Source: Ostrea edulis | Taxonomy: Eukaryota | Assembly (NCBI RefSeq): GCF_947568905.1 | Contig: NC_079173.1 | Location: 29,202,001-29,266,000 of the forward strand | DNA length: 64,000 nucleotides | Direction of reading: 5' to 3' | Part shown: positions 424-63,822 of the stretch, in pieces | Position numbering within the stretch: the stretch's first letter is position 1 | Layout: each line of letters begins with the position of its first letter | Translations under genes and position numbers: made by a program | Notes under the pieces: generated by a model | What the model was told of the DNA's origin: nothing | The model's input: the letters and a program-made list of their open reading frames with translations, nothing else | The model's database searches: none

Positions 424-1671
424 CTGATGGAGTCACGCTTGGTGTAACAGATGGTGTGACACTTGGTGTAACTGATGGTGTGACGCTAGGTGTGACACTT
501 GGAGTAACCGATGGTGTGACACTTGGTGTAACTGAGGGTGTGACGCTTGGTGTGACACTTGGAGTAACCGATGGTGTGACACTTGGTGTAACTGAGGGTG
601 TGACACTTGGTGTTACAGATGGCGTTGGTGTGACGCTTGGTGTAACAGATGGAGTCACGCTGGGAGTAACACTTGGTGTTACAGATGGTGTTGGTGTGAC
701 GCTTGGTGTAACAGAAGGAGTCAGGCTGGGAGTAACACTTGGAGTAACAGATGGTGTGACACTTGGAGTAACCGAGGGTGTGACACTTGGTGTAACTGAT
801 GGTGTGACGCTTGGTGTGACACTTGGAGTAACCGATGGTGTGACACTTGGTGTAACTGAGGGTGTGACACTTGGTGTTACAGATGGCGTTGGTGTGACGC
901 TTGGTGTAACAGATGGAGTCACGCTGGGAGTAACACTTGGTGTTACAGATGGTGTTGGTGTGACGCTTGGTGTAACAGATGGAGTCACGCTGGGAGTAAC
1001 ACTTGGAGTAACATATGGTGTGACACTTGGAGTAACCGAGGGTGTGACACTTGGTGTAACTGATGGTGTGACGCTTGGTGTGACACTTGGAGTAACCGAT
1101 GGTGTGACACTTGGTGTAACTGAGGGTGTGACACTTGGTGTTACAGATGGCGTTGGTGTGACGCTTGGTGTAACAGATGGAGTCACGCTGGGAGTAACAC
1201 TTGGTGTAACAGATGGTGTTGGTGTAACGCTGGGTGTGACAGATGGAGTCACGCTGGGTGTAACACTTGGGGTAACCGATGGTGTGACGCTTGGAGTAAC
1301 AGATGGTGTGACGCTAGGTGTAAGGCTTGGTGTAACAGATGGCGTGACACTTGGTGTTACAGATGGTGTTGGTGTGACGCTTGGTGTAACAGATGGAGTC
1401 ACGCTGGGAGTAACACTTGGTGTAACAGATGGTGTTGGTGTAACGCTGGGTGTGACAGATGGAGTCACGCTGGGTGTAACACTTGGGGTAACCGATGGTG
1501 TGACACTTGGAGTAACAGATGGTGTGACGCTTGGTGTAACAGATGGAGTGACACTTGGTGTAACGGATGGTGTGACACTTGGTGTAACGGATGGTGTGAC
1601 GCTTGGTGTCACAGATGGCGTTGGTGTAACGCTTGGTGTAACAGATGGTGTTGGAGTTACGCTTGGTGTGC
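424..1671 (-). CDS. PTS exon, (VTPS)n, 1248 nt, phase 1-1
   Basis: Acceptor aatgaatag|GCACACC, donor CCATCAG|gtacac, length divisible by 3. Confidence 0.85.
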
Positions 1672-4600
1672 CTATTCATTGAAGAAATGTTAGATACTGT
1701 ATTAACTTTCTGACAAAGGATGAATAGATTTGATGTTTTCTTTTTCCCAGTAAAAGAGTAAGAGACATATGGGGTATAATGAACACCAAGGACAGAAAAA
1801 GGAGCCAATTGATGTGGAATTCACTCCAATTTACACGTGATTTGTAGCTGAGAATAAACAAAACAATTTACACCATACTTATACAAGCATAGTGGATAGT
1901 GAATTTACGTTGAATGGAAAGATGTTAGTCCTTTCAAGCCTTGTTGCATTACAACAAAATCACCTAAACTACGCGATTCATCATCTTTTCAGACGTAGTT
2001 ATATGTAAAGATTGAAATTATGTTGGATCTGAATTAATACAAAGCGGAAGGAGATTGTAAAGTGCTTACAGGGTGGTGTAATTCAAAATAGTGCCATTAT
2101 AACCCCATGGGTAATTAAGTACACATGGCTGATAATAAAGGATTTCTTGCAATTCTACAAGTACTCTTTACTTGTGACATGACGTTTCTAAGTTGTGCAT
2201 CTGAAATGCCTCCAGGGATTTTATATCTGCATCTAACATTAACAGTAGGAAATTCTTAAAGATTTGTCACTTGATGTATACCCATCCAAGATTAAAGCAA
2301 ATTTGAATTCTATCACTGGTAATACTGCATCACATGTATAAATAGAGCCTTACTACACAAGCACCGACAATGAAATTGTTGGGTTGAAAGAAAAACTTCA
2401 AACCTGTTTTGAACTTTGCAATTGTTCTGATGAATTTATATTACTAATGACTACACAAGGGGATTTCTTTACAGTTGTCACGGATATGCAATTTTGCAAT
2501 CAAATTAGTTATTCGATAAGATTTGCCTTTAAATAGTCATCAATTCTCATTCATAATTCAAATTCTGGGTAAATGTTCCTAACGTTTACTGCTTTCAAAA
2601 ATCCAACAATCCTCTACCTTTAGGTAAAGGATATCATTATTGTGGTCTCTAATATTCAAATTTGAAGAAGTGAATTTAAAAGACATCTACTTTACTGCAG
2701 ACATATTTTCTCCTCTCCACAAAAATTCAGAAATATCTCCGTATCCAAATGATATAAATATTAAATGATGCATTTCATTTCACAACCTAGGCTTACATCA
2801 GCCTATAAAAAAGAATTACAAACAATTCATCAACATGCCAACGAACCTTATTGGTCAAGTAATAAGAATGTAATAAGAGCATTGAACAAAGTGTACCTGA
2901 TGGAGTCGCACTTGGTGTAACAGATGGTGTGACACTTGGTGTAACTGATGGTGTGACACTTGGAGTAACCGATGGTGTGACACTTGGTGTAACTGAGGGT
3001 GTGACACTTGGTGTTACAGATGGTGTTGGTGTGACGCTTGGTGTAGCAGATGAAGTCACGCTGGAAGTAACACTTGGAGTAACAGATGGTGTGACACTTG
3101 GAGTAACCGATGGTGTGACACTTGGTGTAACTGATGGTGTGACGCTTGGTGTTACACTTGGAGTAATCGATGGTGTGACACTTGGTGTTACAGATGGTGT
3201 TGGTGTGACGCTTGGTGTAACAGATGGAGTCACGCTGGGAGTAACACTTGGTGTAACAGATGGTGTCGGTGTAACGCTGGGTGTGACAGATGGAGTCACG
3301 CTGGGTGTAACACTTGGGGTAACCGATGGTGTGACACTTGGAGTAACCGATGGTGTAACACTTGGTGTAACTGATGGTGTGACGCTTGGTGTGACACTTG
3401 GAGTAACCGATGGTGTGACACTTGGTGTTACAGATGGTGTTGGTGTGACGCTTGGTGTAACAGATGGAGTCACGCTGGGAGTAACACTTGGTGTAACAGA
3501 TGGTGTTGGTGTAACGCTGGGTGTGACAGATGGAGTCACGCTGGGTGTAACACTTGGGGTAACCGATGGTGTGACACTTGGAGTAACAGATGGTGTGACA
3601 CTTGGTGTGACGCTTGGTGTAACTGATGGTGTGACACTTGGTGTTACAGATGGTGTTGGTGTGATGCTTGGTGTAACAGATGGAGTCACGCTGGGAGTAA
3701 CACTTGGTGTAACAGATGGTGTCGGTGTAACGCTGGGTGTGACAGATGGAGTCACGCTGGGTGTAACACTTGGGGTAACTGATGGTGTGACACTTGGAGT
3801 AACAGATGGTGTGACACTTGGTGTAACGGATGGTGTGACACTTGGTGTTACAGATGGTGTAACTGATGGTGTGACGCTTGGTGTCACAGATGGGGTTGGT
3901 GTTACGCTTGGTGTACCTGAGGGTGTGACACTTGAAGTAGCTGAAGGTGTTACACTTGGGGTAACTGATGGTGTTGATTGAGTAGGGATTGTTATGCTTG
4001 GTGTTGGTGATACTGCAATATTGATCGCACCTGTTTAGTTCGCCTTGTTTGCTTAAAATACTATTGTATTAGTAGTATAGGCTATAGTATAAATGACTGC
4101 AAAATGACAATTATTGAAGAACGTATATGCTTATTTCTAATATATACACAAGAAAGATAAATCAATGCTACGAGCAAAATATCCATGCTTAAATCGTACA
4201 TTTAAGAAAATAAACTAACCATTGTTGGTAGGTATTCGTGGTTGTTGTTTTTTCGATGATCAAGAAATATGTATAGATTTTGACGTCATACATTAGTTAA
4301 ACATTGCGTCACGTTGATAATATAGCTAAACTATTCCGTAGAGAAATAAAGAAATTAAAAATTCGATATGTATTATTAAAATGTATTTTAAATACTATCT
4401 GACTTATGTCTTAGCGGCTGTACTTGTCTTTCACACCCTGCTCCTCCATTTGTAGATTATATTGCTGCCAAGTCCATGAAAGTTTGTTTTTAAATTTACA
4501 ATATCATATGTGACTGCATTTAGGAATACATATTCATAATTAATCTTGCGAATTGAGGGTCTTAAAACAGACAGTACCTTGATATGACAGGAAATGTCCA

Positions 4601-5325
4601 AGGAATATCATTCAAATAAACGATTGCATTTTGGACACATTTCAGTTATTAATAAGCAGAAAGTATACAAAAGTTTCAATGCTGTTAAACATTTTCGTCC
4701 ACTATGAGCACCTTAGATATAATTAATATCACTATGTCTTTATGTATCATTTTCGGATATCTATTTCTATAATAGAAAAATTATGTATCTACATTAATAA
4801 AGCAAACGCTGGGATTAGAAGGGCTTAGCTTTGCAAATAAAGGGTGAGTGAAAAACAGATGAAAACAAATTCTGAGATAAGGTTTACTTTTTAATAAATA
4901 TGTTACATTTTCATATTTATATGATGAAAAGCTTGCAAGAGTATTCCTAAATTGTCATTTTACAATCATTTGAAAATCAAGTTAGATAGGATGATACAAT
5001 TCACCATCACTCCACCACACTATAGAAACTCATAGCAATATTTCATGCTTTAATAAAAAATGAAATTAACAAATAAATAGGAACTTAATTCAAGAATTTC
5101 GGTAACATTTATGAAAAGAAAAACAACTGACCTGAAGAAGGTGTTGTTATGGATGGGGTGGAGACCTTTGTTGCCGGTGTAGACGGGACTGTGATAGATG
5201 TGGTTCCACTTGGTGTTGATCCACTTGGAGTGGTTATTGGTGTCGATTCAGTTGCTTCAGTTGTAGATGGTGGGGTTTGAGGTTTAACACTAGTTGTTCC
5301 TGTCCAAAGAAATTGATTGTACCAC

Positions 5326-5414
<89 letters not shown>

Positions 5415-7809
5415 CATTAATCATGTCACAATAACAAACATGTAAACATTCAATATGAAATTATTGGTCGATACCTTTAAAGACACAGTTGATATTGAGT
5501 TAGAATTTACAGCTGAAGCAACCGGTTCAAGAGAGAATTTACAGTCAGTCACGATTGATCTCTTTTATGATCAGTAAAAAAAAAACAACATGCGATCTAG
5601 GGATTTTTTAGTCTGTCATTAAAATCATTTGCCGTATATACATTTAATCCCTGTTCTTTGATCTTTTCTATCAAGTGATGTTAGATGAAATACATGTATA
5701 CCTGAATTCTGAAAATCTCTTCTGTGAAAACATATATTATTTCTAGATCAGAAAAACTATCAATGCACACAATTGGATATAGACTCTAATATTCGAGCTA
5801 AAAGACTATTCCTAAAATTGTTACCATTACTGTGTTTTCAATAGTATTATATAAACGTCTACATCTATAAGTAGATCATATCCTTACCAGTTTCGAAACA
5901 TGCGCGTAGATCAAGCTCCACTACATAGCCTTGGTTAATATCAATCTTTTCCAGGAGAGTGATGGTCACTTGATCTGCTATTGTCCCCGAAGGGAAAACC
6001 AATGAGTTCGAGTCTGTTACTTCCTAAAAACAAGAGAGGACAAAGGGTTTTATGTGCAGGGGGAAATACTTCACAAATTGACCCGATACCTTAACTCAGT
6101 TCGATATATCATTTTCTGTTTGCAACATATACATAATTAGGAAAAATTATCAACACTCGCCATCAACTTTTGATACCCCATCAAATCAACGTATTACTGC
6201 AGAAATATATCATCGCACGTTTTGAAGCCTAACTGTGGTTCTCCTACTTTAATGGCATTGTGATCGCGCGTACTTGTCTCGGAAAGAACATGTCGGTGTT
6301 GTAATATCAAATATTAAATCAAAATGAATAGAAATGCACGGATGTATAATCATCTACATACAATACCAATTTTACCTTACATTTGGAGGCTTCTACAATA
6401 TTTATTAAAATTGAAGTCCTCTATTGAAGAGGAATTTGAATGATTTCTTTCCGGATAATGCAGGCCATACTATTAAATTTGAGCTGTATGGAATGACTCC
6501 CATGAAAAGGTTAAATATACCGAACATTTATCAATGTCATAACTCCTATAAAGAATACAAGAATACGAGTAGGACAAACGCGGAGCCTCGAGCATACCAG
6601 AGGTGGAATTGGGTACATAAGAGGAGTAAGCATCCTCTGTTTACCGGTCACACACGCCGGTGGGGTCTATATCCTGATTAGGTAAACAGAGTAATCCGTA
6701 GTAAAATCAGTGTGTAAAAGACGGTCTCAATAGGCATGAAAAATGTTAAATAGCATTTTATCCAATGACAGGTTGTATTGGTAAAATTACCCATTAGTTT
6801 TTGATAAGTCTTTTAAGGAGGTACTCTACATCGTCATAATAGCTGACTTCCTTTTAAAACATGGATGAAAATTAAAATATCAGCAATATTTGTCCATTCA
6901 TTTTAAAAACTATCGCCTAACTGAATAGCTCAATAAGTTAGCACGTCGACTGCTGAACTGTAGATCGTGTGTTCGAGTCCAGCAGGGGTTTTAAATTTTT
7001 TTCAGATTGTTTTCTACTTAAACTGTATTTTTTGACTAAATAAAGTAAATTTGAAAGTTTTCAATTTCAAAATATTGTTGTACATATCCTCCACTTTTCA
7101 TCCACATCAAATTTCTCTGGTGTAGCATACCTCCTTAATAGGTCCAATTAGGTTTTCGGCATGTCTATTTATCTAAAATCAAGTCTTTAAACTTCCTTTA
7201 ATCTAGGGACAGTACTTGCAAAAAATTATTTTCAAATTACTCAAGTTTTGTGTTAAACAGATGACTCATGTCTAAATAGACGACAAATAATGTTTTAATA
7301 AAGAAAACTGTAATGAGCTGATACAGTACCGTGTAGAGAGTGGCCGAGATCTCAGTAGATTTCTTCAGATACACTTCAAATTTTTTGATATTTGAGGGTG
7401 ATCCCAAATCAATGGAGCCCAACTCAGTGTCACCAGGCAAATCAATTGTTATTGTAAATGTTGAAATTCCAACTGGTACAACGAGCGACTCATTTCTAAG
7501 CTTGTCCACCTCCGACTGAAGGGATGGTTCGCTTAATGTTATATAGTTGCTAGGAATAATGGCAGAATCAAGCATTCCATTCACTTCAAGACAAGGATTT
7601 CCTGCCATGGAAAAAAATTAAATTTAATTAGAATTTCAAATACAATAGTTTCGTAGTTTCACTCTAACATTTAACGAAACTCTAGTTGAATAACATAAAC
7701 TTAGAACGCTGTTAGAGTTCTTAGTCGTTGTATATCGATACGTATGTGTGATAGTGTTAGAATGGTAAATTGATTGATTGTATCTTGTTTAATATTCCTC
7801 TTGAGAATA

Positions 7810-7855
<46 letters not shown>

Positions 7856-13800: not shown

Positions 13801-15634
13801 CCCCACCCTTCCCACTGGGGGGGACATGATTTTAACAAACTTGAATCTGCATTATGTCAGAAAGCTTTCATGTAAATGTAAACTCCTCTGGACCAATGCT
13901 TCTTGAGAAGAAAACCTTTCAAGATTTTCCTTATATATTTGTGTGTAAACCTTTGATTCCCCTTCGTCGTCTCCCCTTCCCGGGGGGGGGGGGGGGGCGT
14001 GATGTTAACAAACTTGAACTTGCATTATGTCAGGGAGCTGTCATGTAAACTTTTCAGGCTCAGTGAATCTTGAGACAATATTTCAAAAGATTTTCCCTAT
14101 ATATTTATATGTAAAACTTTAATACCTTATTGCAACCCCATCATATCCTTGAGGGTCATGATTTTAACAAACTTGAATCTGTACTATATCAGGAAGCTGC
14201 CATATATGCAAAGGAGAACAATTTATTTTCTGCATAAAAGATGCCTATGTCTGATAACTTATGAAAATGATAACTTTTAGGGAGAATTTTGCAGTACTGT
14301 ATTCGAGATATATTGCCCCAAACTTCATGAAATAAAATAATTTGCTTAAAATTACCACAATGTTGCAATAAATGCTCAAATGTGATATAAAGCACAACCA
14401 TGAATCCAGTACATTATGACATCAATTTTAGAATATCACCATGAAGATTAAATATTGAGAATTTTTCACTTCTCCTGACCTGTCCTGATATCTCCAAACA
14501 AACATATCTTAAATACCAGACTATCAATTTTCAACATACTTTATATATCATAAGAGGGATATGCTTGTGATGAAAGGTGAAGATAACGAACAGTGATCAA
14601 TCTCATAACTCATATAAGCAATACAAAATATGTAGTTGGGCAAACACGGACCCCTGGACACACCAGAGGTGGAATGAGGTGCCTAGGAGGAGTACGCATC
14701 GCCTGTCAACCGGTAACAACCGCCGTGAGCCCTATATCCTGATCAGGTAAACGTAGTTATCCGTAGTCAAAATCAGTGTGCCAAGAACGGCCTAACAATC
14801 TGTATGAAACATGTCAGACAACATTTGACCCAATGATAGGTTGTATTGACCAACTAAATCGTTATAACGACCGTAGAATTTGCGAAATGCTTACTTCAAT
14901 CGAGACTGTTGAAATCCCTGAATTAGTTTCAAGATGGAAACATTGTTTACACTAAGTTTACTATATTTAGTTAAACCCTGTCGTGAAAGTAAACAGACGA
15001 CAAAATTTAAGACCGTCAAAAATGTGCCAATTGAGGGATAAAACTATTCAAAAGAAGGATACAAAGGTGACGATAAAAACCTGCTCACACGCTCTACTAC
15101 ACTAGAACTCAAACTTCATCACTGTCATAGGCTTACAGATATGACCCTGGTTGAACTGTGTTCACGGCATGACGTCAGAGTTGGAAAAGCAAGATAAATT
15201 ATAAACCTGACATTTAGAATTTTTTAACTACATTCACCCTCATTCATTCTCAATGTGCACATAGTATGCTAAGTACTTCGTTACTAGCTTGAAAATACGG
15301 ATGCATATTTAATTACCGTGATAAAATTTAGAAATGAAAGGATTATCTCCCTCACGCATATCTCTTAGACGAATTTGACTCCACTTTTTTGGCACACTGT
15401 TTTGCCATATAATAGCTCTAAAACTTCATTGTTATTTCGGATTTCAAACATTTCGGTCGAGCATCACTGAAGAGACATTATTTGTCGAAATGCACATCTG
15501 GTGAATCAAAATTGTACCGTATAAGTTTTACATACAATATCATTTTTATTACCAAATAGATTGTCAAGTCTTAGATTATCAATTTCTTTCACCAATGTTT
15601 TCAAATAAATATTCAGAGACTGTTACTAGATAAT

Positions 15635-15706
<72 letters not shown>

Positions 15707-54700: not shown

Positions 54701-57700
54701 TGGTGTATGTCAACTCAAAAAGCAATTACCAAGACAATTAAAACACAAAAATGGACAGAGAGAAAAGAGACGGAAAGAGACAGACCGACGGACATATCAA
54801 CAGAAAAGTCGAATATGAGGAAAATAGAGAAATAAAACAGCGGGTATACCTTTTTCAATACATGCTTCGATTCCCAAGTTATTGACAGAAATGCTTTCTG
54901 TTTCCTCTGCTTGTGGTTTGAAGACAATCTCTAATGCTTTGCCTTCCAAGCCTGTGAAGTCTGTCTCAACAGTACTCTCCTCACTTGGATTGGTTACGAT
55001 CTGCAAATGTCATACAAAATGCATACATAAAACGTCTCAAACATGAATGAAGATAATCATTTGCATTCAAAATCACTCGGAACTACATCGTACCTCTTCC
55101 TTTCTCAACTCAGTATCCTCTGGAGTTGTAACAATGAAGGTAACGGTTTGTGTATTTTTGGTGGTCACCGTGATCTTTCCTATGGGAGATTTATCATCCT
55201 TGTCTTTAAAGACAATCCTGATTTTCACCTCCTGGCCGGGCTCGCCAGTTACCGTTCCCAGGGTACCATTTAGAGGAGACGAAGTAGGAGACTTATGTTC
55301 GTCAACAAAGACCTCTACCAGATCGGGTAATTCGTCTGTACCAGCATCGTCCAACATGGGAACAGGACAGACTGAAAGAAGGAAAAACTCAAATCTCTCA
55401 ACAAGCATTCTTCTTCTACCTCTACTCCATGTCTTCATTCCAAATTTCATCTTTGTAATCTTAGTCAGTTTCATACAACAATTGCTTTTATTTAGGTGTT
55501 CTTCGACACTCGTACAAATTTGAAACATTTTCAAAGATGTCAGAATTTGAAAAGTTTTAAAAAACATTTAAAAACACATCTTTTAAGACTTGCATATCAT
55601 TAGTATTATAGGTGGTTAATCTTCATGGTTTCTTTACAATCATTTTAACATGACCTTTTCAAGTGTATAATTGTATATTCATTTCAACTATTGTATTTTA
55701 TACCATTTGATTGTACGGCGTGGAACTTTTTTCATGCATATCATGTGTTAGATTTTAGTAATTTTACTTCACATCATTCATGTTTTTCTAGCATTGTTCT
55801 GACATTATCTGTCTTAGTGCTATTATAATTTCCTTTCATTACGTTTATAACATTCTGTATCATTGTTATTGTCTGCAGCGCTTTAGAGTGGCTATTTTTG
55901 GTGTTCCTTTACACATAAGCTTCTAAGGAGGAAAGTTTATAGTCTATTCTTGCCATATTTCGGGTTCTGTACTTCATATCAAAGGGAAATTCTGCTTATA
56001 TAATGCGTTACAATCACCAGCGTTTTATGCAATACAAATGCCAGAAGGTAGTATCCATGTCACATACCGTACGGGCTAGTCGGTGCAGATGGTGAGATTG
56101 TTGTTGAGTAGGGTGGACCTGGTGGTGTGGTAGTCGTTGGTGTGGACACAGTAGTTGGTGTACTAACAGCTTCTGAAAAACAAAAACATGCATCAAATGT
56201 CAAAGTATATCCTCCGGTTTTATTCATTTATGGTGTATGTCAACTCAAAAAGCAATTACCAAGACAATTAAAACACAAAAATGGACAGAGAGAAAAGAGA
56301 CGGAAAGAGACAGACCGACGGACATATCAACAGAAAAGTCGAATATGAGGAAAATAGAGAAATAAAACAGCGGGTATACCTTTTTCAATACATGCTTCGA
56401 TTCCCAAGTTATTGACAGAAATGCTTTCTGTTTCCTCTGCTTGTGGTTTGAAGACAATCTCTAATGCTTTGCCTTCCAAGCCTGTGAAGTCTGTCTCAAC
56501 AGTACTCTCCTCACTTGGATTGGTTACGATCTGCAAATGTCATACAAAATGCATACATAAAACGTCTCAAACATGAATGAAGATAATCATTTGCATTCAA
56601 AATCACTCGGAACTACATCGTACCTCTTCCTTTCTCAACTCAGTATCCTCTGGAGTTGTAACAATGAAGGTAACGGTTTGTGTATTTTTGGTGGTCACCG
56701 TGATCTTTCCTATGGGAGATTTATCATCCTTGTCTTTAAAGACAATCCTGATTTTCACCTCCTGGCCGGGCTCGCCAGTTACCGTTCCCAGGGTACCATT
56801 TAGAGGAGACGAAGTAGGAGACTTATGTTCGTCAACAAAGACCTCTACCAGATCGGGTAATTCGTCTGTACCAGCATCGTCCAACATGGGAACAGGACAG
56901 ACTGAAAGAAGGAAAAACTCAAATCTCTCAACAAGCATTCTTCTTCTACCTCTACTCCATGTCTTCATTCCAAATTTCATCTTTGTAATCTTAGTCAGTT
57001 TCATACAACAATTGCTTTTATTTAGGTGTTCTTCGACACTCGTACAAATTTGAAACATTTTCAAAGATGTCAGAATTTGAAAAGTTTTAAAAAACATTTA
57101 AAAACACATCTTTTAAGACTTGCATATCATTAGTATTATAGGTGGTTAATCTTCATGGTTTCTTTACAATCATTTTAACATGACCTTTTCAAGTGTATAA
57201 TTGTATATTCATTTCAACTATTGTATTTTATACCATTTGATTGTACGGCGTGGAACTTTTTTCATGCATATCATGTGTTAGATTTTAGTAATTTTACTTC
57301 ACATCATTCATGTTTTTCTAGCATTGTTCTGACATTATCTGTCTTAGTGCTATTATAATTTCCTTTCATTACGTTTATAACATTCTGTATCATTGTTATT
57401 GTCTGCAGCGCTTTAGAGTGGCTATTTTTGGTGTTCCTTTACACATAAGCTTCTAAGGAGGAAAGTTTATAGTCTATTCTTGCCATATTTCGGGTTCTGT
57501 ACTTCATATCAAAGGGAAATTCTGCTTATATAATGCGTTACAATCACCAGCGTTTTATGCAATACAAATGCCAGAAGGTAGTATCCATGTCACATACCGT
57601 ACGGGCTAGTCGGTGCAGATGGTGAGATTGTTGTTGAGTAGGGTGGACCTGGTGGTGTGGTAGTCGTTGGTGTGGACACAGTAGTTGGTGTACTAACAGC

Positions 57701-60700
57701 TTCTGAAAAACAAAAACATGCATCAAATGTCAAAGTATATCCTCCGGTTTTATTCATTTATGGTGTATGTCAACTCAAAAAGCAATTACCAAGACAATTA
57801 AAACACAAAAATGGACAGAGAGAAAAGAGACGGAAAGAGACAGACCGACGGACATATCAACAGAAAAGTCGAATATGAGGAAAATAGAGAAATAAAACAG
57901 CGGGTATACCTTTTTCAATACATGCTTCGATTCCCAAGTTATTGACAGAAATGCTTTCTGTTTCCTCTGCTTGTGGTTTGAAGACAATCTCTAATGCTTT
58001 GCCTTCCAAGCCTGTGAAGTCTGTCTCAACAGTACTCTCCTCACTTGGATTGGTTACGATCTGCAAATGTCATACAAAATGCATACATAAAACGTCTCAA
58101 ACATGAATGAAGATAATCATTTGCATTCAAAATCACTCGGAACTACATCGTACCTCTTCCTTTCTCAACTCAGTATCCTCTGGAGTTGTAACAATGAAGG
58201 TAACGGTTTGTGTATTTTTGGTGGTCACCGTGATCTTTCCTATGGGAGATTTATCATCCTTGTCTTTAAAGACAATCCTGATTTTCACCTCCTGGCCGGG
58301 CTCGCCAGTTACCGTTCCCAGGGTACCATTTAGAGGAGACGAAGTAGGAGACTTATGTTCGTCAACAAAGACCTCTACCAGATCGGGTAATTCGTCTGTA
58401 CCAGCATCGTCCAACATGGGAACAGGACAGACTGAAAGAAGGAAAAACTCAAATCTCTCAACAAGCATTCTTCTTCTACCTCTACTCCATGTCTTCATTC
58501 CAAATTTCATCTTTGTAATCTTAGTCAGTTTCATACAACAATTGCTTTTATTTAGGTGTTCTTCGACACTCGTACAAATTTGAAACATTTTCAAAGATGT
58601 CAGAATTTGAAAAGTTTTAAAAAACATTTAAAAACACATCTTTTAAGACTTGCATATCATTAGTATTATAGGTGGTTAATCTTCATGGTTTCTTTACAAT
58701 CATTTTAACATGACCTTTTCAAGTGTATAATTGTATATTCATTTCAACTATTGTATTTTATACCATTTGATTGTACGGCGTGGAACTTTTTTCATGCATA
58801 TCATGTGTTAGATTTTAGTAATTTTACTTCACATCATTCATGTTTTTCTAGCATTGTTCTGACATTATCTGTCTTAGTGCTATTATAATTTCCTTTCATT
58901 ACGTTTATAACATTCTGTATCATTGTTATTGTCTGCAGCGCTTTAGAGTGGCTATTTTTGGTGTTCCTTTACACATAAGCTTCTAAGGAGGAAAGTTTAT
59001 AGTCTATTCTTGCCATATTTCGGGTTCTGTACTTCATATCAAAGGGAAATTCTGCTTATATAATGCGTTACAATCACCAGCGTTTTATGCAATACAAATG
59101 CCAGAAGGTAGTATCCATGTCACATACCGTACGGGCTAGTCGGTGCAGATGGTGAGATTGTTGTTGAGTAGGGTGGACCTGGTGGTGTGGTAGTCGTTGG
59201 TGTGGACACAGTAGTTGGTGTACTAACAGCTTCTGAAAAACAAAAACATGCATCAAATGTCAAAGTATATCCTCCGGTTTTATTCATTTATGGTGTATGT
59301 CAACTCAAAAAGCAATTACCAAGACAATTAAAACACAAAAATGGACAGAGAGAAAAGAGACGGAAAGAGACAGACCGACGGACATATCAACAGAAAAGTC
59401 GAATATGAGGAAAATAGAGAAATAAAACAGCGGGTATACCTTTTTCAATACATGCTTCGATTCCCAAGTTATTGACAGAAATGCTTTCTGTTTCCTCTGC
59501 TTGTGGTTTGAAGACAATCTCTAATGCTTTGCCTTCCAAGCCTGTGAAGTCTGTCTCAACAGTACTCTCCTCACTTGGATTGGTTACGATCTGCAAATGT
59601 CATACAAAATGCATACATAAAACGTCTCAAACATGAATGAAGATAATCATTTGCATTCAAAATCACTCGGAACTACATCGTACCTCTTCCTTTCTCAACT
59701 CAGTATCCTCTGGAGTTGTAACAATGAAGGTAACGGTTTGTGTATTTTTGGTGGTCACCGTGATCTTTCCTATGGGAGATTTATCATCCTTGTCTTTAAA
59801 GACAATCCTGATTTTCACCTCCTGGCCGGGCTCGCCAGTTACCGTTCCCAGGGTACCATTTAGAGGAGACGAAGTAGGAGACTTATGTTCGTCAACAAAG
59901 ACCTCTACCAGATCGGGTAATTCGTCTGTACCTGCATCGTCCAACATGGGAACAGGACAGACTGAAAGAAGGAAAAACTCAAATCTCTCAACAAGCATTC
60001 TTCTTCTACCTCTACTCCATGTCTTCATTCCAAATTTCATCTTTGTAATCTTAGTCAGTTTCATACAACAATTGCTTTTATTTAGGTGTTCTTCGACACT
60101 CGTACAAATTTGAAACATTTTCAAAGATGTCAGAATTTGAAAAGTTTTAAAAAACATTTAAAAACACATCTTTTAAGACTTGCATATCATTAGTATTATA
60201 GGTGGTTAATCTTCATGGTTTCTTTACAATCATTTTAACATGACCTTTTCAAGTGTATAATTGTATATTCATTTCAACTATTGTATTTTATACCATTTGA
60301 TTGTACGGCGTGGAACTTTTTTCATGCATATCATGTGTTAGATTTTAGTAATTTTACTTCACATCATTCATGTTTTTCTAGCATTGTTCTGACATTATCT
60401 GTCTTAGTGCTATTATAATTTCCTTTCATTACGTTTATAACATTCTGTATCATTGTTATTGTCTGCAGCGCTTTAGAGTGGCTATTTTTGGTGTTCCTTT
60501 ACACATAAGCTTCTAAGGAGGAAAGTTTATAGTCTATTCTTGCCATATTTCGGGTTCTGTACTTCATATCAAAGGGAAATTCTGCTTATATAATGCGTTA
60601 CAATCACCAGCGTTTTATGCAATACAAATGCCAGAAGGTAGTATCCATGTCACATACCGTACGGGCTAGTCGGTGCAGATGGTGAGATTGTTGTTGAGTA

Positions 60701-63700
60701 GGGTGGACCTGGTGGTGTGGTAGTCGTTGGTGTGGACACAGTAGTTGGTGTACTAACAGCTTCTGAAAAACAAAAACATGCATCAAATGTCAAAGTATAT
60801 CCTCCGGTTTTATTCATTTATGGTGTATGTCAACTCAAAAAGCAATTACCAAGACAATTAAAACACAAAAATGGACAGAGAGAAAAGAGACGGAAAGAGA
60901 CAGACCGACGGACATATCAACAGAAAAGTCGAATATGAGGAAAATAGAGAAATAAAACAGCGGGTATACCTTTTTCAATACATGCTTCGATTCCCAAGTT
61001 ATTGACAGAAATGCTTTCTGTTTCCTCTGCTTGTGGTTTGAAGACAATCTCTAATGCTTTGCCTTCCAAGCCTGTGAAGTCTGTCTCAACAGTACTCTCC
61101 TCACTTGGATTGGTTACGATCTGCAAATGTCATACAAAATGCATACATAAAACGTCTCAAACATGAATGAAGATAATCATTTGCATTCAAAATCACTCGG
61201 AACTACATCGTACCTCTTCCTTTCTCAACTCAGTATCCTCTGGAGTTGTAACAATGAAGGTAACGGTTTGTGTATTTTTGGTGGTCACCGTGATCTTTCC
61301 TATGGGAGATTTATCATCCTTGTCTTTAAAGACAATCCTGATTTTCACCTCCTGGCCGGGCTCGCCAGTTACCGTTCCCAGGGTACCATTTAGAGGAGAC
61401 GAAGTAGGAGACTTATGTTCGTCAACAAAGACCTCTACCAGATCGGGTAATTCGTCTGTACCAGCATCGTCCAACATGGGAACAGGACAGACTGAAAGAA
61501 GGAAAAACTCAAATCTCTCAACAAGCATTCTTCTTCTACCTCTACTCCATGTCTTCATTCCAAATTTCATCTTTGTAATCTTAGTCAGTTTCATACAACA
61601 ATTGCTTTTATTTAGGTGTTCTTCGACACTCGTACAAATTTGAAACATTTTCAAAGATGTCAGAATTTGAAAAGTTTTAAAAAACATTTAAAAACACATC
61701 TTTTAAGACTTGCATATCATTAGTATTATAGGTGGTTAATCTTCATGGTTTCTTTACAATCATTTTAACATGACCTTTTCAAGTGTATAATTGTATATTC
61801 ATTTCAACTATTGTATTTTATACCATTTGATTGTACGGCGTGGAACTTTTTTCATGCATATCATGTGTTAGATTTTAGTAATTTTACTTCACATCATTCA
61901 TGTTTTTCTAGCATTGTTCTGACATTATCTGTCTTAGTGCTATTATAATTTCCTTTCATTACGTTTATAACATTCTGTATCATTGTTATTGTCTGCAGCG
62001 CTTTAGAGTGGCTATTTTTGGTGTTCCTTTACACATAAGCTTCTAAGGAGGAAAGTTTATAGTCTATTCTTGCCATATTTCGGGTTCTGTACTTCATATC
62101 AAAGGGAAATTCTGCTTATATAATGCGTTACAATCACCAGCGTTTTATGCAATACAAATGCCAGAAGGTAGTATCCATGTCACATACCGTACGGGCTAGT
62201 CGGTGCAGATGGTGAGATTGTTGTTGAGTAGGGTGGACCTGGTGGTGTGGTAGTCGTTGGTGTGGACACAGTAGTTGGTGTACTAACAGCTTCTGAAAAA
62301 CAAAAACATGCATCAAATGTCAAAGTATATCCTCCGGTTTTATTCATTTATGGTGTATGTCAACTCAAAAAGCAATTACCAAGACAATTAAAACACAAAA
62401 ATGGACAGAGAGAAAAGAGACGGAAAGAGACAGACCGACGGACATATCAACAGAAAAGTCGAATATGAGGAAAATAGAGAAATAAAACAGCGGGTATACC
62501 TTTTTCAATACATGCTTCGATTCCCAAGTTATTGACAGAAATGCTTTCTGTTTCCTCTGCTTGTGGTTTGAAGACAATCTCTAATGCTTTGCCTTCCAAG
62601 CCTGTGAAGTCTGTCTCAACAGTACTCTCCTCACTTGGATTGGTTACGATCTGCAAATGTCATACAAAATGCATACATAAAACGTCTCAAACATGAATGA
62701 AGATAATCATTTGCATTCAAAATCACTCGGAACTACATCGTACCTCTTCCTTTCTCAACTCAGTATCCTCTGGAGTTGTAACAATGAAGGTAACGGTTTG
62801 TGTATTTTTGGTGGTCACCGTGATCTTTCCTATGGGAGATTTATCATCCTTGTCTTTAAAGACAATCCTGATTTTCACCTCCTGGCCGGGCTCGCCAGTT
62901 ACCGTTCCCAGGGTACCATTTAGAGGAGACGAAGTAGGAGACTTATGTTCGTCAACAAAGACCTCTACCAGATCGGGTAATTCGTCTGTACCAGCATCGT
63001 CCAACATGGGAACAGGACAGACTGAAAGAAGGAAAAACTCAAATCTCTCAACAAGCATTCTTCTTCTACCTCTACTCCATGTCTTCATTCCAAATTTCAT
63101 CTTTGTAATCTTAGTCAGTTTCATACAACAATTGCTTTTATTTAGGTGTTCTTCGACACTCGTACAAATTTGAAACATTTTCAAAGATGTCAGAATTTGA
63201 AAAGTTTTAAAAAACATTTAAAAACACATCTTTTAAGACTTGCATATCATTAGTATTATAGGTGGTTAATCTTCATGGTTTCTTTACAATCATTTTAACA
63301 TGACCTTTTCAAGTGTATAATTGTATATTCATTTCAACTATTGTATTTTATACCATTTGATTGTACGGCGTGGAACTTTTTTCATGCATATCATGTGTTA
63401 GATTTTAGTAATTTTACTTCACATCATTCATGTTTTTCTAGCATTGTTCTGACATTATCTGTCTTAGTGCTATTATAATTTCCTTTCATTACGTTTATAA
63501 CATTCTGTATCATTGTTATTGTCTGCAGCGCTTTAGAGTGGCTATTTTTGGTGTTCCTTTACACATAAGCTTCTAAGGAGGAAAGTTTATAGTCTATTCT
63601 TGCCATATTTCGGGTTCTGTACTTCATATCAAAGGGAAATTCTGCTTATATAATGCGTTACAATCACCAGCGTTTTATGCAATACAAATGCCAGAAGGTA

Positions 63701-63822
63701 GTATCCATGTCACATACCGTACGGGCTAGTCGGTGCAGATGGTGAGATTGTTGTTGAGTAGGGTGGACCTGGTGGTGTGGTAGTCGTTGGTGTGGACACA
63801 GTAGTTGGTGTACTAACAGCTT
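424..63822 (-). CDS. Giant multi-exon mucin-like glycoprotein gene (partial, open at both window ends): tandem Cys-bounded domains plus (VTPS)n PTS tracts
   Basis: About 75 exons with GT-AG boundaries and matching phases can be chained without an internal stop, about 22.6 kb in total. Thr/Ser/Pro-rich tracts are typical of O-glycosylated mucins. No start or stop is seen. Confidence 0.85.
2897..4012 (-). CDS. PTS exon, [15 protein letters not shown](VTPS)n, 1116 nt, phase 1-1
   Basis: Acceptor tattgcag|TATCACC, donor CCATCAG|gtacac. Confidence 0.85.
5132..5299 (-). CDS. Non-repetitive Thr/Ser/Pro linker exon ([21 protein letters not shown]...), 168 nt, phase 1-1
   Basis: Acceptor ggacag|GAACAAC, donor TTCAG|gtcagt, open frame. 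Confidence 0.8.
5331..5410. repeat. (TC)40 microsatellite
   Basis: Perfect dinucleotide run. Confidence 0.98.
5888..6023 (-). CDS. C-terminal exon of diverged Cys-bounded domain ([13 protein letters not shown]...[11 protein letters not shown]), phase 0-1
   Basis: Acceptor gtttttag|GAAGTA, donor ACTG|gtaagg, 136 nt. The phase matches the 7330-7601 exon. Confidence 0.8.
6817..7134. mobile_element. TTAA-flanked MITE (Kolobok- or piggyBac-like) with an internal tRNA-like segment
   Basis: TTAA at 6813-6816 and 7135-7138, imperfect TIRs GGAGGTACTCTACATC / GGAGGTATGCTACACC, and A-box/B-box-like motifs at ~6925-6980. Confidence 0.7.
7330..7601 (-). CDS. N-terminal exon of diverged Cys-bounded domain ([18 protein letters not shown]...ATLYT), phase 1-0
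   Basis: Acceptor catggcag|GAAAT, donor ACG|gtactg, 272 nt, lies within ORF 7237-7608. Confidence 0.8.
7770..8034 (-). mobile_element. SINE-like interspersed repeat with an (AATC)n tail
   Basis: GC-richer island with a short tandem tail. The core CCCGTGTCACAGCAGGAGTGGCACGATAAAGATCCC recalls bivalve V/Meta-type SINE cores (from memory, unverified). A partial second copy lies at ~8070-8110. Confidence 0.55.
8169..8405 (-). CDS. Degenerate PTS exon (GTPS/VTPS...TTPRSTT), 237 nt, phase 1-1
   Basis: Acceptor taaatag|GTACTCC. The donor ACAG|gttcat is weak. Confidence 0.7.
10056..13019 (-). CDS. Very large PTS exon, 2964 nt (988 codons), phase 1-1
   Basis: Acceptor aatgaatag|GCACACC, donor CCATCAG|gtacac, open frame (ORF 10045-12894). 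Confidence 0.85.
13369..14200. repeat. ~166-bp HindIII-type satellite (about 5 diverged monomers) resembling oyster Cg170/HindIII satDNA in a Helentron-like element
   Basis: AAGCTT-like motif at 13531, 13696, 13862, 14035, 14194, preceded by a left segment ACAAAAGGCCCATGGCCACATCGCTCA. Confidence 0.7.
14570..14920. mobile_element. Interspersed repeat (TGAAAGGTGAAGATAACGAACAGTGATCAATCTC...), family unassigned
   Basis: Further copies at ~6535-6800, ~8465-8690, an inverted fragment at ~9183-9250, ~33160-33420, and one in each cassette intron (e.g. ~16550-16866). Confidence 0.7.
15640..15702. repeat. (GA)n microsatellite, ~31 units
   Basis: Perfect dinucleotide run. Confidence 0.98.
15969..16322 (-). 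CDS. PTS cassette exon, 354 nt
   Basis: aaaaag|CCACACC ... CCATCAG|gtagac. Confidence 0.75.
17150..18235 (-). CDS. PTS cassette exon, 1086 nt
   Basis: Conserved cassette splice sites, phase 1-1. Confidence 0.8.
19062..19421 (-). CDS. PTS cassette exon, 360 nt
   Basis: Conserved cassette splice sites, phase 1-1. Confidence 0.8.
20249..21484 (-). CDS. PTS cassette exon, 1236 nt
   Basis: Conserved cassette splice sites, phase 1-1. Confidence 0.8.
22311..22706 (-). CDS. PTS cassette exon, 396 nt
   Basis: Conserved cassette splice sites, phase 1-1. Confidence 0.8.
23527..23886 (-). CDS. PTS cassette exon, 360 nt
   Basis: Conserved cassette splice sites, phase 1-1. Confidence 0.8.
24712..25269 (-). 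CDS. PTS cassette exon, 558 nt
   Basis: Conserved cassette splice sites, phase 1-1. Confidence 0.8.
26096..26899 (-). CDS. PTS cassette exon, 804 nt
   Basis: Conserved cassette splice sites, phase 1-1. Confidence 0.8.
27728..28111 (-). CDS. PTS cassette exon, 384 nt
   Basis: Conserved cassette splice sites, phase 1-1. Confidence 0.8.
28938..29243 (-). CDS. PTS cassette exon, 306 nt
   Basis: Variant donor CCATCAG|gtattc, phase 1-1. Confidence 0.75.
30069..30728 (-). CDS. PTS cassette exon, 660 nt
   Basis: Conserved cassette splice sites, phase 1-1. Confidence 0.8.
31555..31758 (-). CDS. PTS cassette exon, 204 nt
   Basis: Variant donor CCATCAG|gtactc, phase 1-1. Confidence 0.75.
32118..32926 (-). 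pseudogene. Damaged PTS exon: the canonical donor is deleted and the frame reads into TAG at 32118-32120 (pseudo-exon, or exon shortened through an internal donor)
   Basis: The acceptor aactag|CCACAAG is intact. The repeat is fused directly to mid-intron sequence at ~32141. The repeat carries many degenerate codons. Confidence 0.65.
33694..33801 (-). CDS. Short PTS exon, 108 nt, phase 1-1
   Basis: Acceptor ttaatag|GCACACC, donor CCATCAG|gtacac. Confidence 0.8.
33890..34265. mobile_element. Possible degenerate non-autonomous Helitron/Helentron-like fragment
   Basis: The end ACGACGGA...GCAGTAGGTCAATCGAGTTTACTTAAGTGGCCCAAAA recalls oyster non-autonomous element termini. This is recognition from memory only. 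Confidence 0.3.
34291..34320 (-). CDS. 30-nt Thr-rich mini-exon (ATTTTMTTK), phase 1-1
   Basis: Acceptor tttccag|, strong donor AAAA|gtaagt. Confidence 0.7.
34981..35502 (-). CDS. Terminal (most diverged) Cys-bounded domain copy, exons 35225-35502 and 34981-35131
   Basis: VCPVPMLDD...LRKEE|IVTNPSEE...IEACIEK, phases 1-0-1, 93-nt intron. Confidence 0.85.
35793..37324 (-). mobile_element. Tc1/mariner DNA transposon (DD34E), 1532 bp, inserted in an intron
   Basis: ~26-bp TIRs TACTCAACAAA(C/A)AAAGAAA(C/G)GCATAT and a TA duplication (35791-35792, 37325-37326). The empty site is present in sister modules. Confidence 0.92.
36012..37031 (-). pseudogene. Tc1 transposase with one premature stop (TGA at 36177-36179)
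   Basis: Motifs [26 protein letters not shown] with 34 residues between D and E. The frame continues past the TGA to ...NGGHTRY* at 36012, giving 339 aa if repaired. Confidence 0.9.
37394..38227 (-). CDS. Module 1: exons 37950-38227, 37706-37856 (domain) and 37394-37498 (PT linker)
   Basis: 278+151+105 nt, GT-AG, phases 1-0-1-1. Confidence 0.85.
38394..38808 (+). mobile_element. 5'-truncated non-LTR (L2/CR1-like) 3'-end fragment, carried by all later modules
   Basis: 415 bp absent from the terminal module and flanked by AAAGA direct repeats. It ends in a GCGCTTTA...TAGGGCGC hairpin, TATATAAATAAA and an ATT-rich tail. Confidence 0.6.
39003..39835 (-). CDS. Module 2: exons 39558-39835, 39314-39464, 39003-39107
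   Basis: Same three-exon structure. Confidence 0.85.
40534..41367 (-). CDS. Module 3: exons 41090-41367, 40846-40996, 40534-40638
   Basis: Same three-exon structure. Confidence 0.85.
42143..42975 (-). CDS. Module 4: exons 42698-42975, 42454-42604, 42143-42247
   Basis: Same three-exon structure. Confidence 0.85.
43674..44507 (-). CDS. Module 5: exons 44230-44507, 43986-44136, 43674-43778
   Basis: Same three-exon structure. Confidence 0.85.
45283..46115 (-). CDS. Module 6: exons 45838-46115, 45594-45744, 45283-45387
   Basis: Same three-exon structure. Confidence 0.85.
46814..47646 (-). CDS. Module 7: exons 47369-47646, 47125-47275, 46814-46918
   Basis: Same three-exon structure. Confidence 0.85.
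48422..49254 (-). CDS. Module 8: exons 48977-49254, 48733-48883, 48422-48526
   Basis: Same three-exon structure, with a private L>W change (TGWEG). Confidence 0.85.
49951..50781 (-). CDS. Module 9: exons 50504-50781, 50260-50410, 49951-50055
   Basis: Same three-exon structure. Confidence 0.85.
51478..63822 (-). CDS. Modules 10-17 plus the linker exon of module 18 (63718-63822). First module exons are 52034-52311, 51790-51940 and 51478-51582, then every +1530 bp.
   Basis: ORF track repeats at an exact 1530-bp period with identical translations. Confidence 0.85.

What the first reader, a model, noticed from the sequence alone, without database searches (positions are those of the whole stretch)
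424..63822. One giant, fully modular mucin-like gene in which every building block is frame-symmetric
Seen: about 75 exons chain into at least 7,500 aa with no start or stop in 64 kb. Every PTS exon, linker exon and two-exon domain is a phase 1-1 unit. Established: symmetric exons can be skipped, duplicated or deleted without a frameshift. Inference: this is a length-tunable secreted glycoprotein (mucus, adhesive or shell-matrix type) whose size could vary by alternative splicing and by copy-number alleles. Repeat-masking annotation pipelines probably fragment or miss it.
Basis: partly seen in the sequence, partly recalled or inferred. Interest (0 to 1): 0.8.

Follow-up and report, generated by a model that had tools for sequence, protein, structure and literature searches.

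The report
Middle of a giant oyster mucin gene
The window is the middle third of one very large flat-oyster gene for a polymer-forming slime protein (a mucin related to SCO-spondin). It is built from frame-neutral exon cassettes, a real and tidy example of a known design rather than a new kind of gene.

Summary
On the minus strand, 76 AG..GT-bounded exons (63822 down to 424) chain into 23,400 nt, which is 7,800 codons with no stop. All 38 PTS (Pro/Thr/Ser-rich) and linker exons are multiples of three in phase 1-1. All 19 two-exon domains are 1-0/0-1 units.

Spliced contigs from two runs of a close relative join five consecutive exons exactly at predicted sites.

The flanks show what the gene is:
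- Upstream lie EGF, three VWD-C8-TIL units and LDLa repeats.
- Downstream lie six TSP1, TIL, VWC and a cystine knot.
- The locus spans about 185 kb and perhaps 20,000 residues. It is a SCO-spondin-like gel-forming mucin of Ostrea edulis.

The repeated 130-140-residue Cys-bounded domain has no Pfam or PDB sequence match. AlphaFold models of two family members fold confidently as a galactose-binding-domain-like (discoidin/CBM32) jelly roll. About 40 copies exist, and 39 of the 40 genome hits lie in this locus.

The capacity for length change is shown: symmetric units, and copies 99.9-100% identical including their introns. Actual alternative splicing or copy-number alleles were not tested, and no transcript spans the gene.

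Frame-symmetric modules and multi-exon mucin domains are already known. This scan also noted cassette-built mucins on other DNA of this genome. I class it as a new variant of a known kind.

The parts
37394..63822 (-). Tandem array of 1.53-1.61 kb cassettes: 18 PTS linker exons of 105 nt alternating with 17 A-type two-exon domains (278 + 151 nt). Two more cassettes lie beyond the window end.
   Evidence: tblastn of one unit against the window; exon table with AG/GT and phases; cassettes 1-8 are 99.9-100% identical including introns; copies beyond the window
62744..63021 (-). Example A-type domain exon 1 (278 nt, enters in phase 1, leaves in phase 0). It begins with the conserved Cys (CPVPMLDD...).
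   Evidence: sequence read directly
62500..62650 (-). Example A-type domain exon 2 (151 nt, phase 0 to 1). It begins [15 protein letters not shown] and ends ...GIEACIEK with the closing Cys.
62188..62292 (-). Example PTS linker exon (105 nt, phase 1-1, 35 residues rich in Thr/Pro/Ser).
34981..35502 (-). 18th A-type domain in the window (exons 35502-35225 and 35131-34981). An intron holding a transposon separates it from the array.
36177..37031 (-). Tc1/mariner-type transposase ORF inside the 1,891-nt intron. It is not part of the coding chain.
   Evidence: Pfam DDE_3 1.1e-13 and HTH_Tnp_Tc3_2 7.3e-09
34291..34320 (-). 30-nt micro-exon linker (TTTTTMTTK), phase 1-1, with cag| acceptor and |gtaagt donor.
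33694..33801 (-). Short TPSV-type PTS exon (108 nt, phase 1-1).
32126..32926 (-). TPSV-type PTS exon that has lost the family's CATCAG|GTAC donor. Only a weak in-phase GCG|GTCGTT remains, so it may be skipped.
15969..31758 (-). Twelve TPSV-type PTS exons of 204-1,236 nt, all phase 1-1, separated by introns of 820-828 nt.
10056..13019 (-). Largest PTS exon in the window (2,964 nt, 988 codons of TPSV-type repeats, phase 1-1).
8169..8405 (-). PTS exon (237 nt, phase 1-1). Its donor at 8169 is confirmed by spliced contigs.
7330..7601 (-). B-type domain exon 1 (272 nt, phase 1 to 0; [16 protein letters not shown]...). Both junctions are confirmed by spliced contigs.
   Evidence: orthologue P0038:1-127 folds as a galactose-binding-like jelly roll
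5888..6023 (-). B-type domain exon 2 (136 nt, phase 0 to 1; ends ...LDLRACFET). Both junctions are confirmed by spliced contigs.
5132..5299 (-). PTS linker exon after the B domain (168 nt, phase 1-1). Its acceptor is confirmed by contigs, and its donor by the contig running on into exon 4012.
2897..4012 (-). TPSV-type PTS exon (1,116 nt, phase 1-1). Acceptor 4012 matches the end of the X1 contig's extra 36 letters.
424..1671 (-). Last PTS exon in the window (1,248 nt, phase 1-1). Thirteen more PTS-rich open stretches follow downstream of the window.

Best explanation
The window is the central third of a single minus-strand gene of about 185 kb (G000 C10, roughly 29.166-29.357 Mb) in the European flat oyster. 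The gene encodes a giant secreted, disulfide-polymerising mucin with the end-architecture of SCO-spondin.

Shown, the architecture:
- N-terminal side: EGF, three VWD-C8-TIL units and at least 6 LDLa repeats, with one more Pfam-confirmed LDLa just upstream of the window.
- Centre: about 40 copies of a Cys-bounded module of 130-140 residues with a galactose-binding-domain-like (discoidin/CBM32) fold. They are separated by PTS linkers and by huge (TPSV)n-type PTS blocks.
- C-terminal side: TSP1 x6, TIL x2, a weak VWC match and a cystine knot.

Inferred from the families:
- The cystine knot dimerises tails and the D-assemblies link heads, giving linear or net polymers.
- The PTS exons become O-glycan bottle-brushes that hold water.
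- The lectin-fold modules are bare globular knots between brushes, playing the part that CysD domains play in vertebrate mucins. They may bind glycans of neighbouring chains.

Shown, the exon design: every cassette (PTS exon, linker exon, two-exon module) starts and ends in phase 1.

Inferred: the array grew by unequal crossing-over of exon-plus-intron cassettes. It can gain, lose or skip cassettes without breaking the frame.
For: - Open 7,800-codon chain of 76 GT-AG exons with uniform phases.
- Spliced contigs across five consecutive exons at the predicted sites.
- Pfam on same-strand flanks. VWD 1.2e-19, C8 2.1e-09, TIL 5.6e-12, LDLa 4.5e-12, EGF. More LDLa. TSP_1 8.1e-12, TIL, Cys_knot 4.6e-06, VWC 4.9e-04.
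- PTS-rich minus-strand open frames run without a break from 23 kb below to 115 kb above the window.
- The module family has 40 hits in this genome, 39 of them in this locus and all on the minus strand.
- The profile finds only 37 proteins among 1.84 billion.
- AF2 models have pLDDT 92.7 and 78.1. VIA Z is 11-13.7 at rmsd 2.4-3.0 over 114-123 residues to IFT25, CBM32, fucose-binding modules, DOC, neuropilin b1/b2, factor VIII C and discoidin II.
- Intronless cDNA-like contigs from other oysters carry the B-linker, J and I modules, TSP1, TIL, VWC and CTCK in one frame.
- Exon columns vary 2.7-fold less than intron columns among cassettes (12/534 against 60/992, Fisher p 6e-4).
- A candidate signal-peptide exon is phase-compatible with the next Cys-rich exon.
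- Literature: invertebrate gel-forming mucins cluster with SCO-spondins (PMC4948705). Limpet pedal mucus holds a VWD/C8/TIL/LDLa protein and a TSP1+CTCK protein, both SCO-spondin-like (PMC7333891).
Against: - No transcript or protein spans the ends and the middle. RNA-like evidence in the window covers only 5 of 76 exons, comes from a relative that is 2-5% different, and the runs are RNA only by guess.
- Nothing shows that the A-type array is expressed. The searches found only exon-sized genomic ORFs.
- No D4-type VWD was seen before the C-terminus. The VWC match is below Pfam's cut-off. The CCTGW exon gives no EMI hit.
- Magallana cDNA joins the B linker almost directly to the J module. So the large TPSV block is either lineage-specific or skippable.
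- Cassettes identical to the base could partly reflect assembly smoothing.
- Glycan binding by the modules is pure inference. The copies share almost no surface residues (alignments A1, A2).
Confidence: 0.75

Rival explanations
1. The locus is real, but the mature message is far shorter than the exon sum. Most cassettes are alternatively skipped or are unused spare exons, so the roughly 20,000-residue protein never exists as such.
For: - Every cassette is frame-neutral, so skipping costs nothing.
- One exon has already lost its donor.
- Magallana cDNA goes from the B linker almost straight to the J module.
- No expressed sequence of the A array was found.
Against: - All 76 exons keep intact AG/GT sites and open frames.
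- Exons vary less than introns.
- The five exons with RNA-like evidence are spliced consecutively with none skipped.
- Short-read assemblies cannot resolve near-identical cassettes, so missing cDNA says little.
Confidence: 0.25
2. There are several independent genes in a row. For example a VWD/LDLa gene, one or more orphan PTS/module genes and a TSP1/CTCK 'SCO-spondin' gene. On this reading the single chain is an artefact of reading through.
For: - Public models and transcript assemblies exist only as end fragments.
- Limpet mucus proteomics lists the N-type and the C-type proteins as two entries (PMC7333891).
Against: - No in-frame stop, terminal exon or internal signal peptide occurs in 64 kb.
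- Strand and phase are uniform throughout.
- The module family occurs on both sides of the window and almost nowhere else in the genome.
- Polymerising ends without a middle, and a middle without ends, would make little sense for secretion.
- The fragments are what short reads give for a PTS-rich gene.
Confidence: 0.1
3. The perfect cassettes are partly an assembly artefact. The true array is shorter, longer or more heterogeneous than the reference shows.
For: Cassettes 1-8 differ by 0-1 base in 1,530. Such arrays are hard to assemble.
Against: - The older cassettes show an orderly 3.14-kb higher-order pattern with 1.5-2.5% divergence, as natural arrays do.
- The window has no N.
- DNA runs of the species hold 83-85% of the sampled words of the unique part.
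- This rival changes the count of cassettes, not what the gene is.
Confidence: 0.1

Closest known systems
Vertebrate gel-forming mucins (MUC2, MUC5AC, MUC5B, MUC19)
   Same: - N-terminal VWD-C8-TIL x3.
- Very long PTS regions interrupted by small non-glycosylated globular domains.
- C-terminal VWC and cystine knot.
- Presumed head-to-head and tail-to-tail disulfide polymerisation.
   Different: - The PTS region is split into dozens of phase 1-1 exons, not one giant exon.
- The interrupting domains have a discoidin/CBM32-like fold, not CysD.
- LDLa and TSP1 repeats are present.
- No D4 assembly was found.
SCO-spondin (vertebrate Reissner-fibre protein) and the invertebrate 'SCO-spondin-like mucins' of Lang et al. 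2016 (PMC4948705)
   Same: - VWD x3, then LDLa repeats, then TSP1 alternating with TIL, then VWC and CTCK.
- The Magallana orthologue's C-terminus is auto-named SCO-spondin.
   Different: - About 14,000 residues of PTS and about 40 lectin-fold modules are inserted between the LDLa and TSP1 parts.
- Only 6 TSP1 repeats, against about 25 in vertebrates.
- EMI is not confirmed.
- Orthology was not tested by a tree.
Limpet pedal-mucus proteins P-vulgata_3 and P-vulgata_6 (PMC7333891)
   Same: P-vulgata_3 has VWD x3, C8, TIL and LDLa x5. P-vulgata_6 has TSP1 x4 and a cystine knot. These are the two ends seen here, found by proteomics in molluscan adhesive mucus.
   Different: They are reported as two separate, partly incomplete proteins with no mucin middle. 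Whether they are the two ends of one orthologous gene is my inference and was not tested.
Insect hemolectin/hemocytin and lophotrochozoan F5/8C-bearing mucin-like proteins (PMC4948705)
   Same: VWD-C8-TIL units combined with discoidin-fold domains and small PTS stretches.
   Different: - Those carry Pfam-recognisable F5_F8_type_C domains and a 3+2 VWD layout.
- Here the modules escape Pfam, number about 40, and no second VWD block is seen.
Multi-exon mucin domains: chicken Muc13 (PMC1552070) and Schistosoma SmPoMuc (PMC2576457); symmetric disordered exons in general (PMC3632108)
   Same: - Repeated frame-symmetric exons encode the mucin domain.
- In SmPoMuc, variable repeat-exon number and splicing generate polymorphism.
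   Different: - The scale differs: 76 exons in this window alone.
- Folded two-exon modules are included in the cassettes.
- Polymorphism or alternative splicing is not shown here.

Membership tests
Gel-forming mucin | Three N-terminal VWD-C8-TIL assemblies | tested here: met
   Pfam on same-strand exons 70-85 kb upstream of the window: VWD (1.1e-07, 3.1e-04, 1.2e-19), C8 (7.1e-07, 2.1e-09), TIL (5.6e-12, 4.7e-11, 3.5e-10). The link to the window rests on strand, phase and unbroken coding, not on a transcript.
Gel-forming mucin | Long central Pro/Thr/Ser-rich domain | tested here: met
   The window chain is 22% Thr, 19% Pro, 17% Ser and 16% Val over 7,533-7,800 residues. PTS open frames of 2,702, 1,290 and 1,221 residues lie upstream.
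Gel-forming mucin | C-terminal cystine knot (CTCK) | tested here: met
   Cys_knot 4.6e-06, 27.3 bits against a cut-off of 24. It is conserved in cDNA-derived P0017, P0038 and P0078.
Gel-forming mucin | C-terminal D4 (VWD) and VWC domains | tested here: inconclusive
   No VWD was seen among the downstream open frames read and scanned. VWC scores 20.8 bits, below the 27.6 cut-off. P0017 shows 3 weak VWC stretches.
Gel-forming mucin | All parts on one secreted polypeptide | tested here: inconclusive
   The frame is open and uniform, and there is a candidate signal peptide. Spliced contigs cover only 5 exons. There is no end-to-end transcript.
SCO-spondin | N-terminal EMI domain | tested here: inconclusive
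   An exon holds a CCTGW motif, but Pfam gives no EMI hit on it. Earlier EMI exons were not identified.
SCO-spondin | LDL-receptor class A repeats after the VWD block | tested here: met
   Six LDLa exons follow the third TIL. One more, plus a Cys-rich look-alike without a Pfam hit, lies just upstream of the A array.
SCO-spondin | Many TSP1 repeats interleaved with TIL, then VWC and CTCK | tested here: met
   Six TSP_1/TSP1_spondin exons and two TIL. P0017 has 6 TSP1 stretches, TSP1_spondin 8.6e-37. The number is far lower than in vertebrates.
SCO-spondin | Orthology to vertebrate SSPO by phylogeny | not tested
   I built no tree. The name comes from an automatic UniRef label and from Lang et al. 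2016.
F5/8 type C (discoidin) / CBM32 domain | Sequence match to the family profile | tested here: not met
   No PF00754 or any other Pfam hit, whether exon by exon or on whole modules from P0017, P0007 and P0024 at E up to 1. The profile against PDB sequences gives nothing below E 0.2.
F5/8 type C (discoidin) / CBM32 domain | Galactose-binding-domain-like beta jelly roll | tested here: met
   Two AF2 models (pLDDT 92.7 and 78.1). Foldseek E 1e-06 with probability 1.00. VIA Z 11-13.7, rmsd 2.4-3.0 over 114-123 of 127-131 residues. The models are of orthologous I-type and B-type modules, not of the A type.
F5/8 type C (discoidin) / CBM32 domain | Cys at the start and near the end of the domain (termini tied together) | tested here: met
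   The first Cys is invariant in alignment A1. Every full-length module ends ...AC(I/F/T)(E/Q) or VCYTP. The disulfide itself was not measured in the models.
F5/8 type C (discoidin) / CBM32 domain | Conserved ligand-binding loops or sugar binding | not testable with these tools
   The copies share 8-26% identity, with only the Cys and one Asn conserved. Binding needs an assay.
Phase 1-1 symmetric module genes (exon-shuffling rule for extracellular proteins) | Each module bounded by phase-1 introns | tested here: met
   All 38 single-exon units and all 19 two-exon units in the window.

The most novel reading that the evidence does not exclude
A single polypeptide of roughly 20,000 residues is made. 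Its 40 or so lectin-fold modules bind the O-glycans of neighbouring chains, giving reversible cross-links. The number of modules and PTS cassettes differs between individuals, and between tissues by exon skipping. This would let the oyster set mucus stiffness or stickiness by cassette count. It would also mean that the 'SCO-spondin' entries in molluscan mucus and larval proteomes are the ends of such mucins rather than neural proteins.
Probability: 0.15. Interest if true: 0.7.

Novelty: new variant of a known kind. Interest (0 to 1): 0.5.

Why it matters
- It gives molluscan mucus a concrete backbone gene. The gene joins two protein types that proteomics has so far reported separately under the name SCO-spondin-like.
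- It warns that automatic 'SCO-spondin' labels in bivalves may point to mucins, not to nervous-system proteins.
- It adds a module family with a lectin fold that no profile library recognises. This is a candidate functional stand-in for CysD domains.
- The perfectly frame-neutral cassette array is a clean natural system. It can test whether mucin length varies by unequal crossing-over or by exon skipping.
- It is a hard test case for gene annotation.
- The design principle itself is textbook, so the value is in the example, not in a new rule.

Tried and rejected
- **Plus-strand reading.** The long [10 protein letters not shown] ORFs are the reverse complement of the TPSV codons. They have no consistent splice sites, and the spliced contigs give GT..AG only on the minus strand. 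Rejected.
- **Pfam on the repeated domain.** Exon-by-exon and whole-module scans gave nothing.
- **PDB sequence profile.** Nothing below E 0.2.
- **Word-index protein search with the A-type exon-1 ORF.** The aim was a spliced A-type protein usable as a reference. Only five exon-sized genomic ORFs came back. So the joined A-type domain was never searched or folded. A spliced model has no reference, and that step was left out. The exon chain was joined only inside scripts, to count codons, stops and variable sites.
- **Search with P0038 for annotated models.** Only two cDNA-derived C-terminal fragments were found.
- **RNA runs of the window's own species.** None was found. X7 and X8 proved to be genomic DNA, with contigs running through introns.
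- **EMI domain.** Not confirmed.
- **Simple hydrophobicity scan for a signal peptide.** A looser pass gave one good candidate, which remains unverified.
- **Shell-matrix or cement role.** No evidence either way.

Full report
**What is in the window.** The window is G000 contig C10, 29,202,001-29,266,000. The genome is the Ostrea edulis reference. Contig C2 has the same length (109,476,225) as the contig recorded for XP_056009747.1 of that species, and it encodes part of that protein at 100% identity.

The window holds two kinds of minus-strand coding sequence.
- From about 300 to 33,000 there are long open frames of TPSV-type Pro/Thr/Ser repeats.
- From 37,400 to the window end there is a tandem array with a 1.53-kb period.

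The plus-strand ORFs are mirror images of the repeats. The strong positive GC skew over the PTS parts fits ACN, CCN and TCN codons on the minus strand.

**Checking the exon claim.** I read one unit base by base. I located all copies with tblastn, listed in-phase acceptors and donors, and chained the result.
- There are 76 exons, all bounded by AG and GT.
- They total 23,400 nt, or 7,800 codons, with no stop.
- The 38 PTS or linker exons are multiples of three and lie in phase 1-1.
- The 18 A-type domains (278 + 151 nt) and the one B-type domain (272 + 136 nt) enter and leave in phase 1, with a phase-0 intron inside.
- Intron lengths are stereotyped: 696/93/207 nt in the young cassettes and 820-828 nt between the TPSV exons.
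- One exon (32926-32126) has lost the family donor. Leaving it out keeps the frame, giving 7,533 codons.

The chain was joined only inside scripts, to count codons and stops.

**Evidence of splicing.** No RNA run of the species itself was found. Two runs of a close relative (organism A, 2-5% different, RNA by guess) each hold one contig that skips three introns. The contig joins 8315-8169, 7601-7330, 6023-5888 and 5299-5132, with GT..AG on the minus strand. Each junction is the one predicted from sequence. The X1 contig then continues with 36 letters identical to 3977-4012, ending at the predicted acceptor. Runs X7 and X8 of the species itself run through the introns and are genomic. The A-type array and the 826-nt-intron series remain untested.

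**What the gene is.** I fetched 240 kb of flanks. PTS-rich minus-strand frames run from 23 kb below to 115 kb above the window, including single open frames of 2,702, 1,290 and 1,221 residues.
- Further upstream, on the same strand, lie an EGF, three VWD-C8-TIL sets and six LDLa exons. One more LDLa lies just above the A array.
- About 5 kb beyond a CCTGW-motif exon lies a good signal-peptide candidate, MERGSIPIHLGLLLWILTLTPAVLTQ. Its phase-2 donor fits that exon's acceptor. Pfam does not confirm an EMI domain.
- Downstream lie two to three more modules, six TSP1 exons, two TIL, a weak VWC match and a cystine knot. The gene ends near 35.7 kb below the window.

This is the end-architecture of SCO-spondin, and the polymerising ends of gel-forming mucins, with a mucin middle. 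A rough sum gives on the order of 20,000 residues: about 14,000 of PTS, about 40 modules of about 135, and about 2,200 for the two ends. That figure is an estimate, not a verified product.

**The repeated domain.** Exon by exon it matches nothing in Pfam. A profile of nine diverged exon-1 copies (alignment A1, 8-26% identity; only the first Cys and one Asn invariant) found just 37 proteins among 1.84 billion representatives. Most were exon-sized ORFs from oyster DNA. Within this genome, 39 of 40 hits lie in this locus, all on the minus strand. The single outlier is a gene with two CUB domains, one module, a PTS stretch and a transmembrane segment, annotated 'mucin-2-like'.

Three hits gave contiguous whole modules:
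- P0038/P0017, the cDNA-derived C-terminus of the Magallana orthologue. UniRef A0A8W8MB95 is auto-named SCO-spondin and starts inside the B module.
- P0007.
- P0024, from an unidentified organism.

Whole modules still have no Pfam or PDB sequence match. AlphaFold2 on P0038:346-476 gave pLDDT 92.7 and pTM 0.87. On P0038:1-127, the orthologue of the window's B module, it gave pLDDT 78.1. Both are beta jelly rolls of the galactose-binding-domain-like class.
- Foldseek E is about 1e-06.
- VIA Z is 11-13.7 at rmsd 2.4-3.0 over 114-123 residues.
- The matches include IFT25, CBM32 modules, pneumococcal fucose-binding modules, DOC/APC10, neuropilin b1/b2, factor VIII C and discoidin II.

The fold is therefore known, while the sequence family is unrecognised. 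The A type itself could not be folded because no reference holds its two exons joined.

**How it most likely works.**
- Shown: the domain make-up, the frame-neutral cassettes and the fold.
- Inferred from the families: tails dimerise through the cystine knot and heads link through the D assemblies. The PTS exons become dense O-glycan brushes. The modules are bare knots between brushes, as CysD domains are in MUC2 and MUC5AC.
- Speculative: many structural neighbours bind Gal, GalNAc or Fuc, so glycan cross-linking is possible. The copies share almost no surface residues, which favours a spacer role as much as a lectin one.

**Length tuning.**
- Cassettes 1-8 differ by 0-1 base in 1,530, introns included.
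- Cassettes 11-17 form a 3.14-kb two-cassette higher-order repeat.
- Exon columns vary 2.7-fold less than intron columns (12/534 against 60/992, p 6e-4).

This is the signature of recent unequal crossing-over under constraint. Copy number is therefore likely to be labile, but no second allele was examined. A Magallana cDNA contig joins the B linker almost directly to the J module. Here about 4,000 residues of TPSV exons lie between them, and the relative's contig includes the first of these exons. The block is either a lineage expansion or skippable. Alternative splicing itself was not observed.

**Comparison with what is known.**
- Lang et al. 2016 (PMC4948705) report that invertebrate gel-forming mucins sit closest to SCO-spondins, and that F5/8C domains typify lophotrochozoan mucin-like proteins.
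- Limpet pedal mucus holds a VWD/C8/TIL/LDLa protein and a TSP1+CTCK protein, both called SCO-spondin-like (PMC7333891). I suspect, without test, that these are the two ends of such a gene.
- Oyster larval proteomes list 'SCO-spondin' and read it as neural, by name only (PMC7525975). I did not link those entries to this gene.
- Symmetric exons encoding disordered extracellular segments (PMC3632108) and multi-exon mucin domains (PMC1552070, PMC2576457) are established.
- Earlier notes of this scan describe other cassette-built mucins elsewhere in this genome.

**Verdict.** It is untested on actual length variation. The gene is a new variant of a known kind, and its most original element is the unrecognised lectin-fold module family. 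Interest is moderate.

Noticed in passing
window 36177-37031 (-): A Tc1/mariner-type transposase ORF (DDE_3, HTH_Tnp_Tc3_2) sits inside one intron of the array. It stretches that intron to 1,891 nt, against 696-775 nt in sister cassettes.
   Followed up: partly
window 6428-7203, 7786-8173, 8368-8755, 9144-9337: Intronic stretches collect thousands-fold contig depth and many variant letters in all four runs laid. They are dispersed repeats (MITE- or SINE-like) and were not classified.
   Followed up: no
window 32126-32926 (-): One TPSV exon has lost the CATCAG|GTAC donor that its 16 sister exons keep. A weak in-phase GCG|GTCGTT remains, and read-through meets TAG two codons later.
   Followed up: partly
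G000 C2:32512147-32512386 (+), locus L027: The only copy of the module family outside the big locus lies in a gene annotated mucin-2-like / LOC125682221 (XP_056009747.1). That gene has two CUB domains, one G-type module, a PTS stretch and a transmembrane tail. The module is about 85% identical to the G-type copies of the giant gene, which suggests exon transfer between the two genes.
   Followed up: partly
L007-L008 (window-relative +104 to +116 kb) and L008-L009 (+119 to +126 kb): Two further cassette arrays of the same gene. One has nine 1,423-bp units with an H-type module plus a linker of about 60 residues. The other has three units of about 2.8 kb with a G-type module.
   Followed up: partly
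L006 / L005 / L002 (window-relative +76 to +104 kb): Three single PTS open frames of 1,221, 1,290 and 2,702 residues, with repeat types different from TPSV. The same gene therefore mixes giant single-exon PTS blocks with finely split ones.
   Followed up: no
L026:2-430 (Magallana-like cDNA contig from SRR14803176): The cDNA joins the linker after the B module almost directly to the J module. Ostrea has about 15 TPSV exons between them. This is a between-genus length difference at one defined site.
   Followed up: partly
window 5300-5460 and 15640-15700: (GA)n/(CT)n microsatellites lie in introns close to exon boundaries. The read-laying output notes that reads seem cut at 5322-5418.
   Followed up: no
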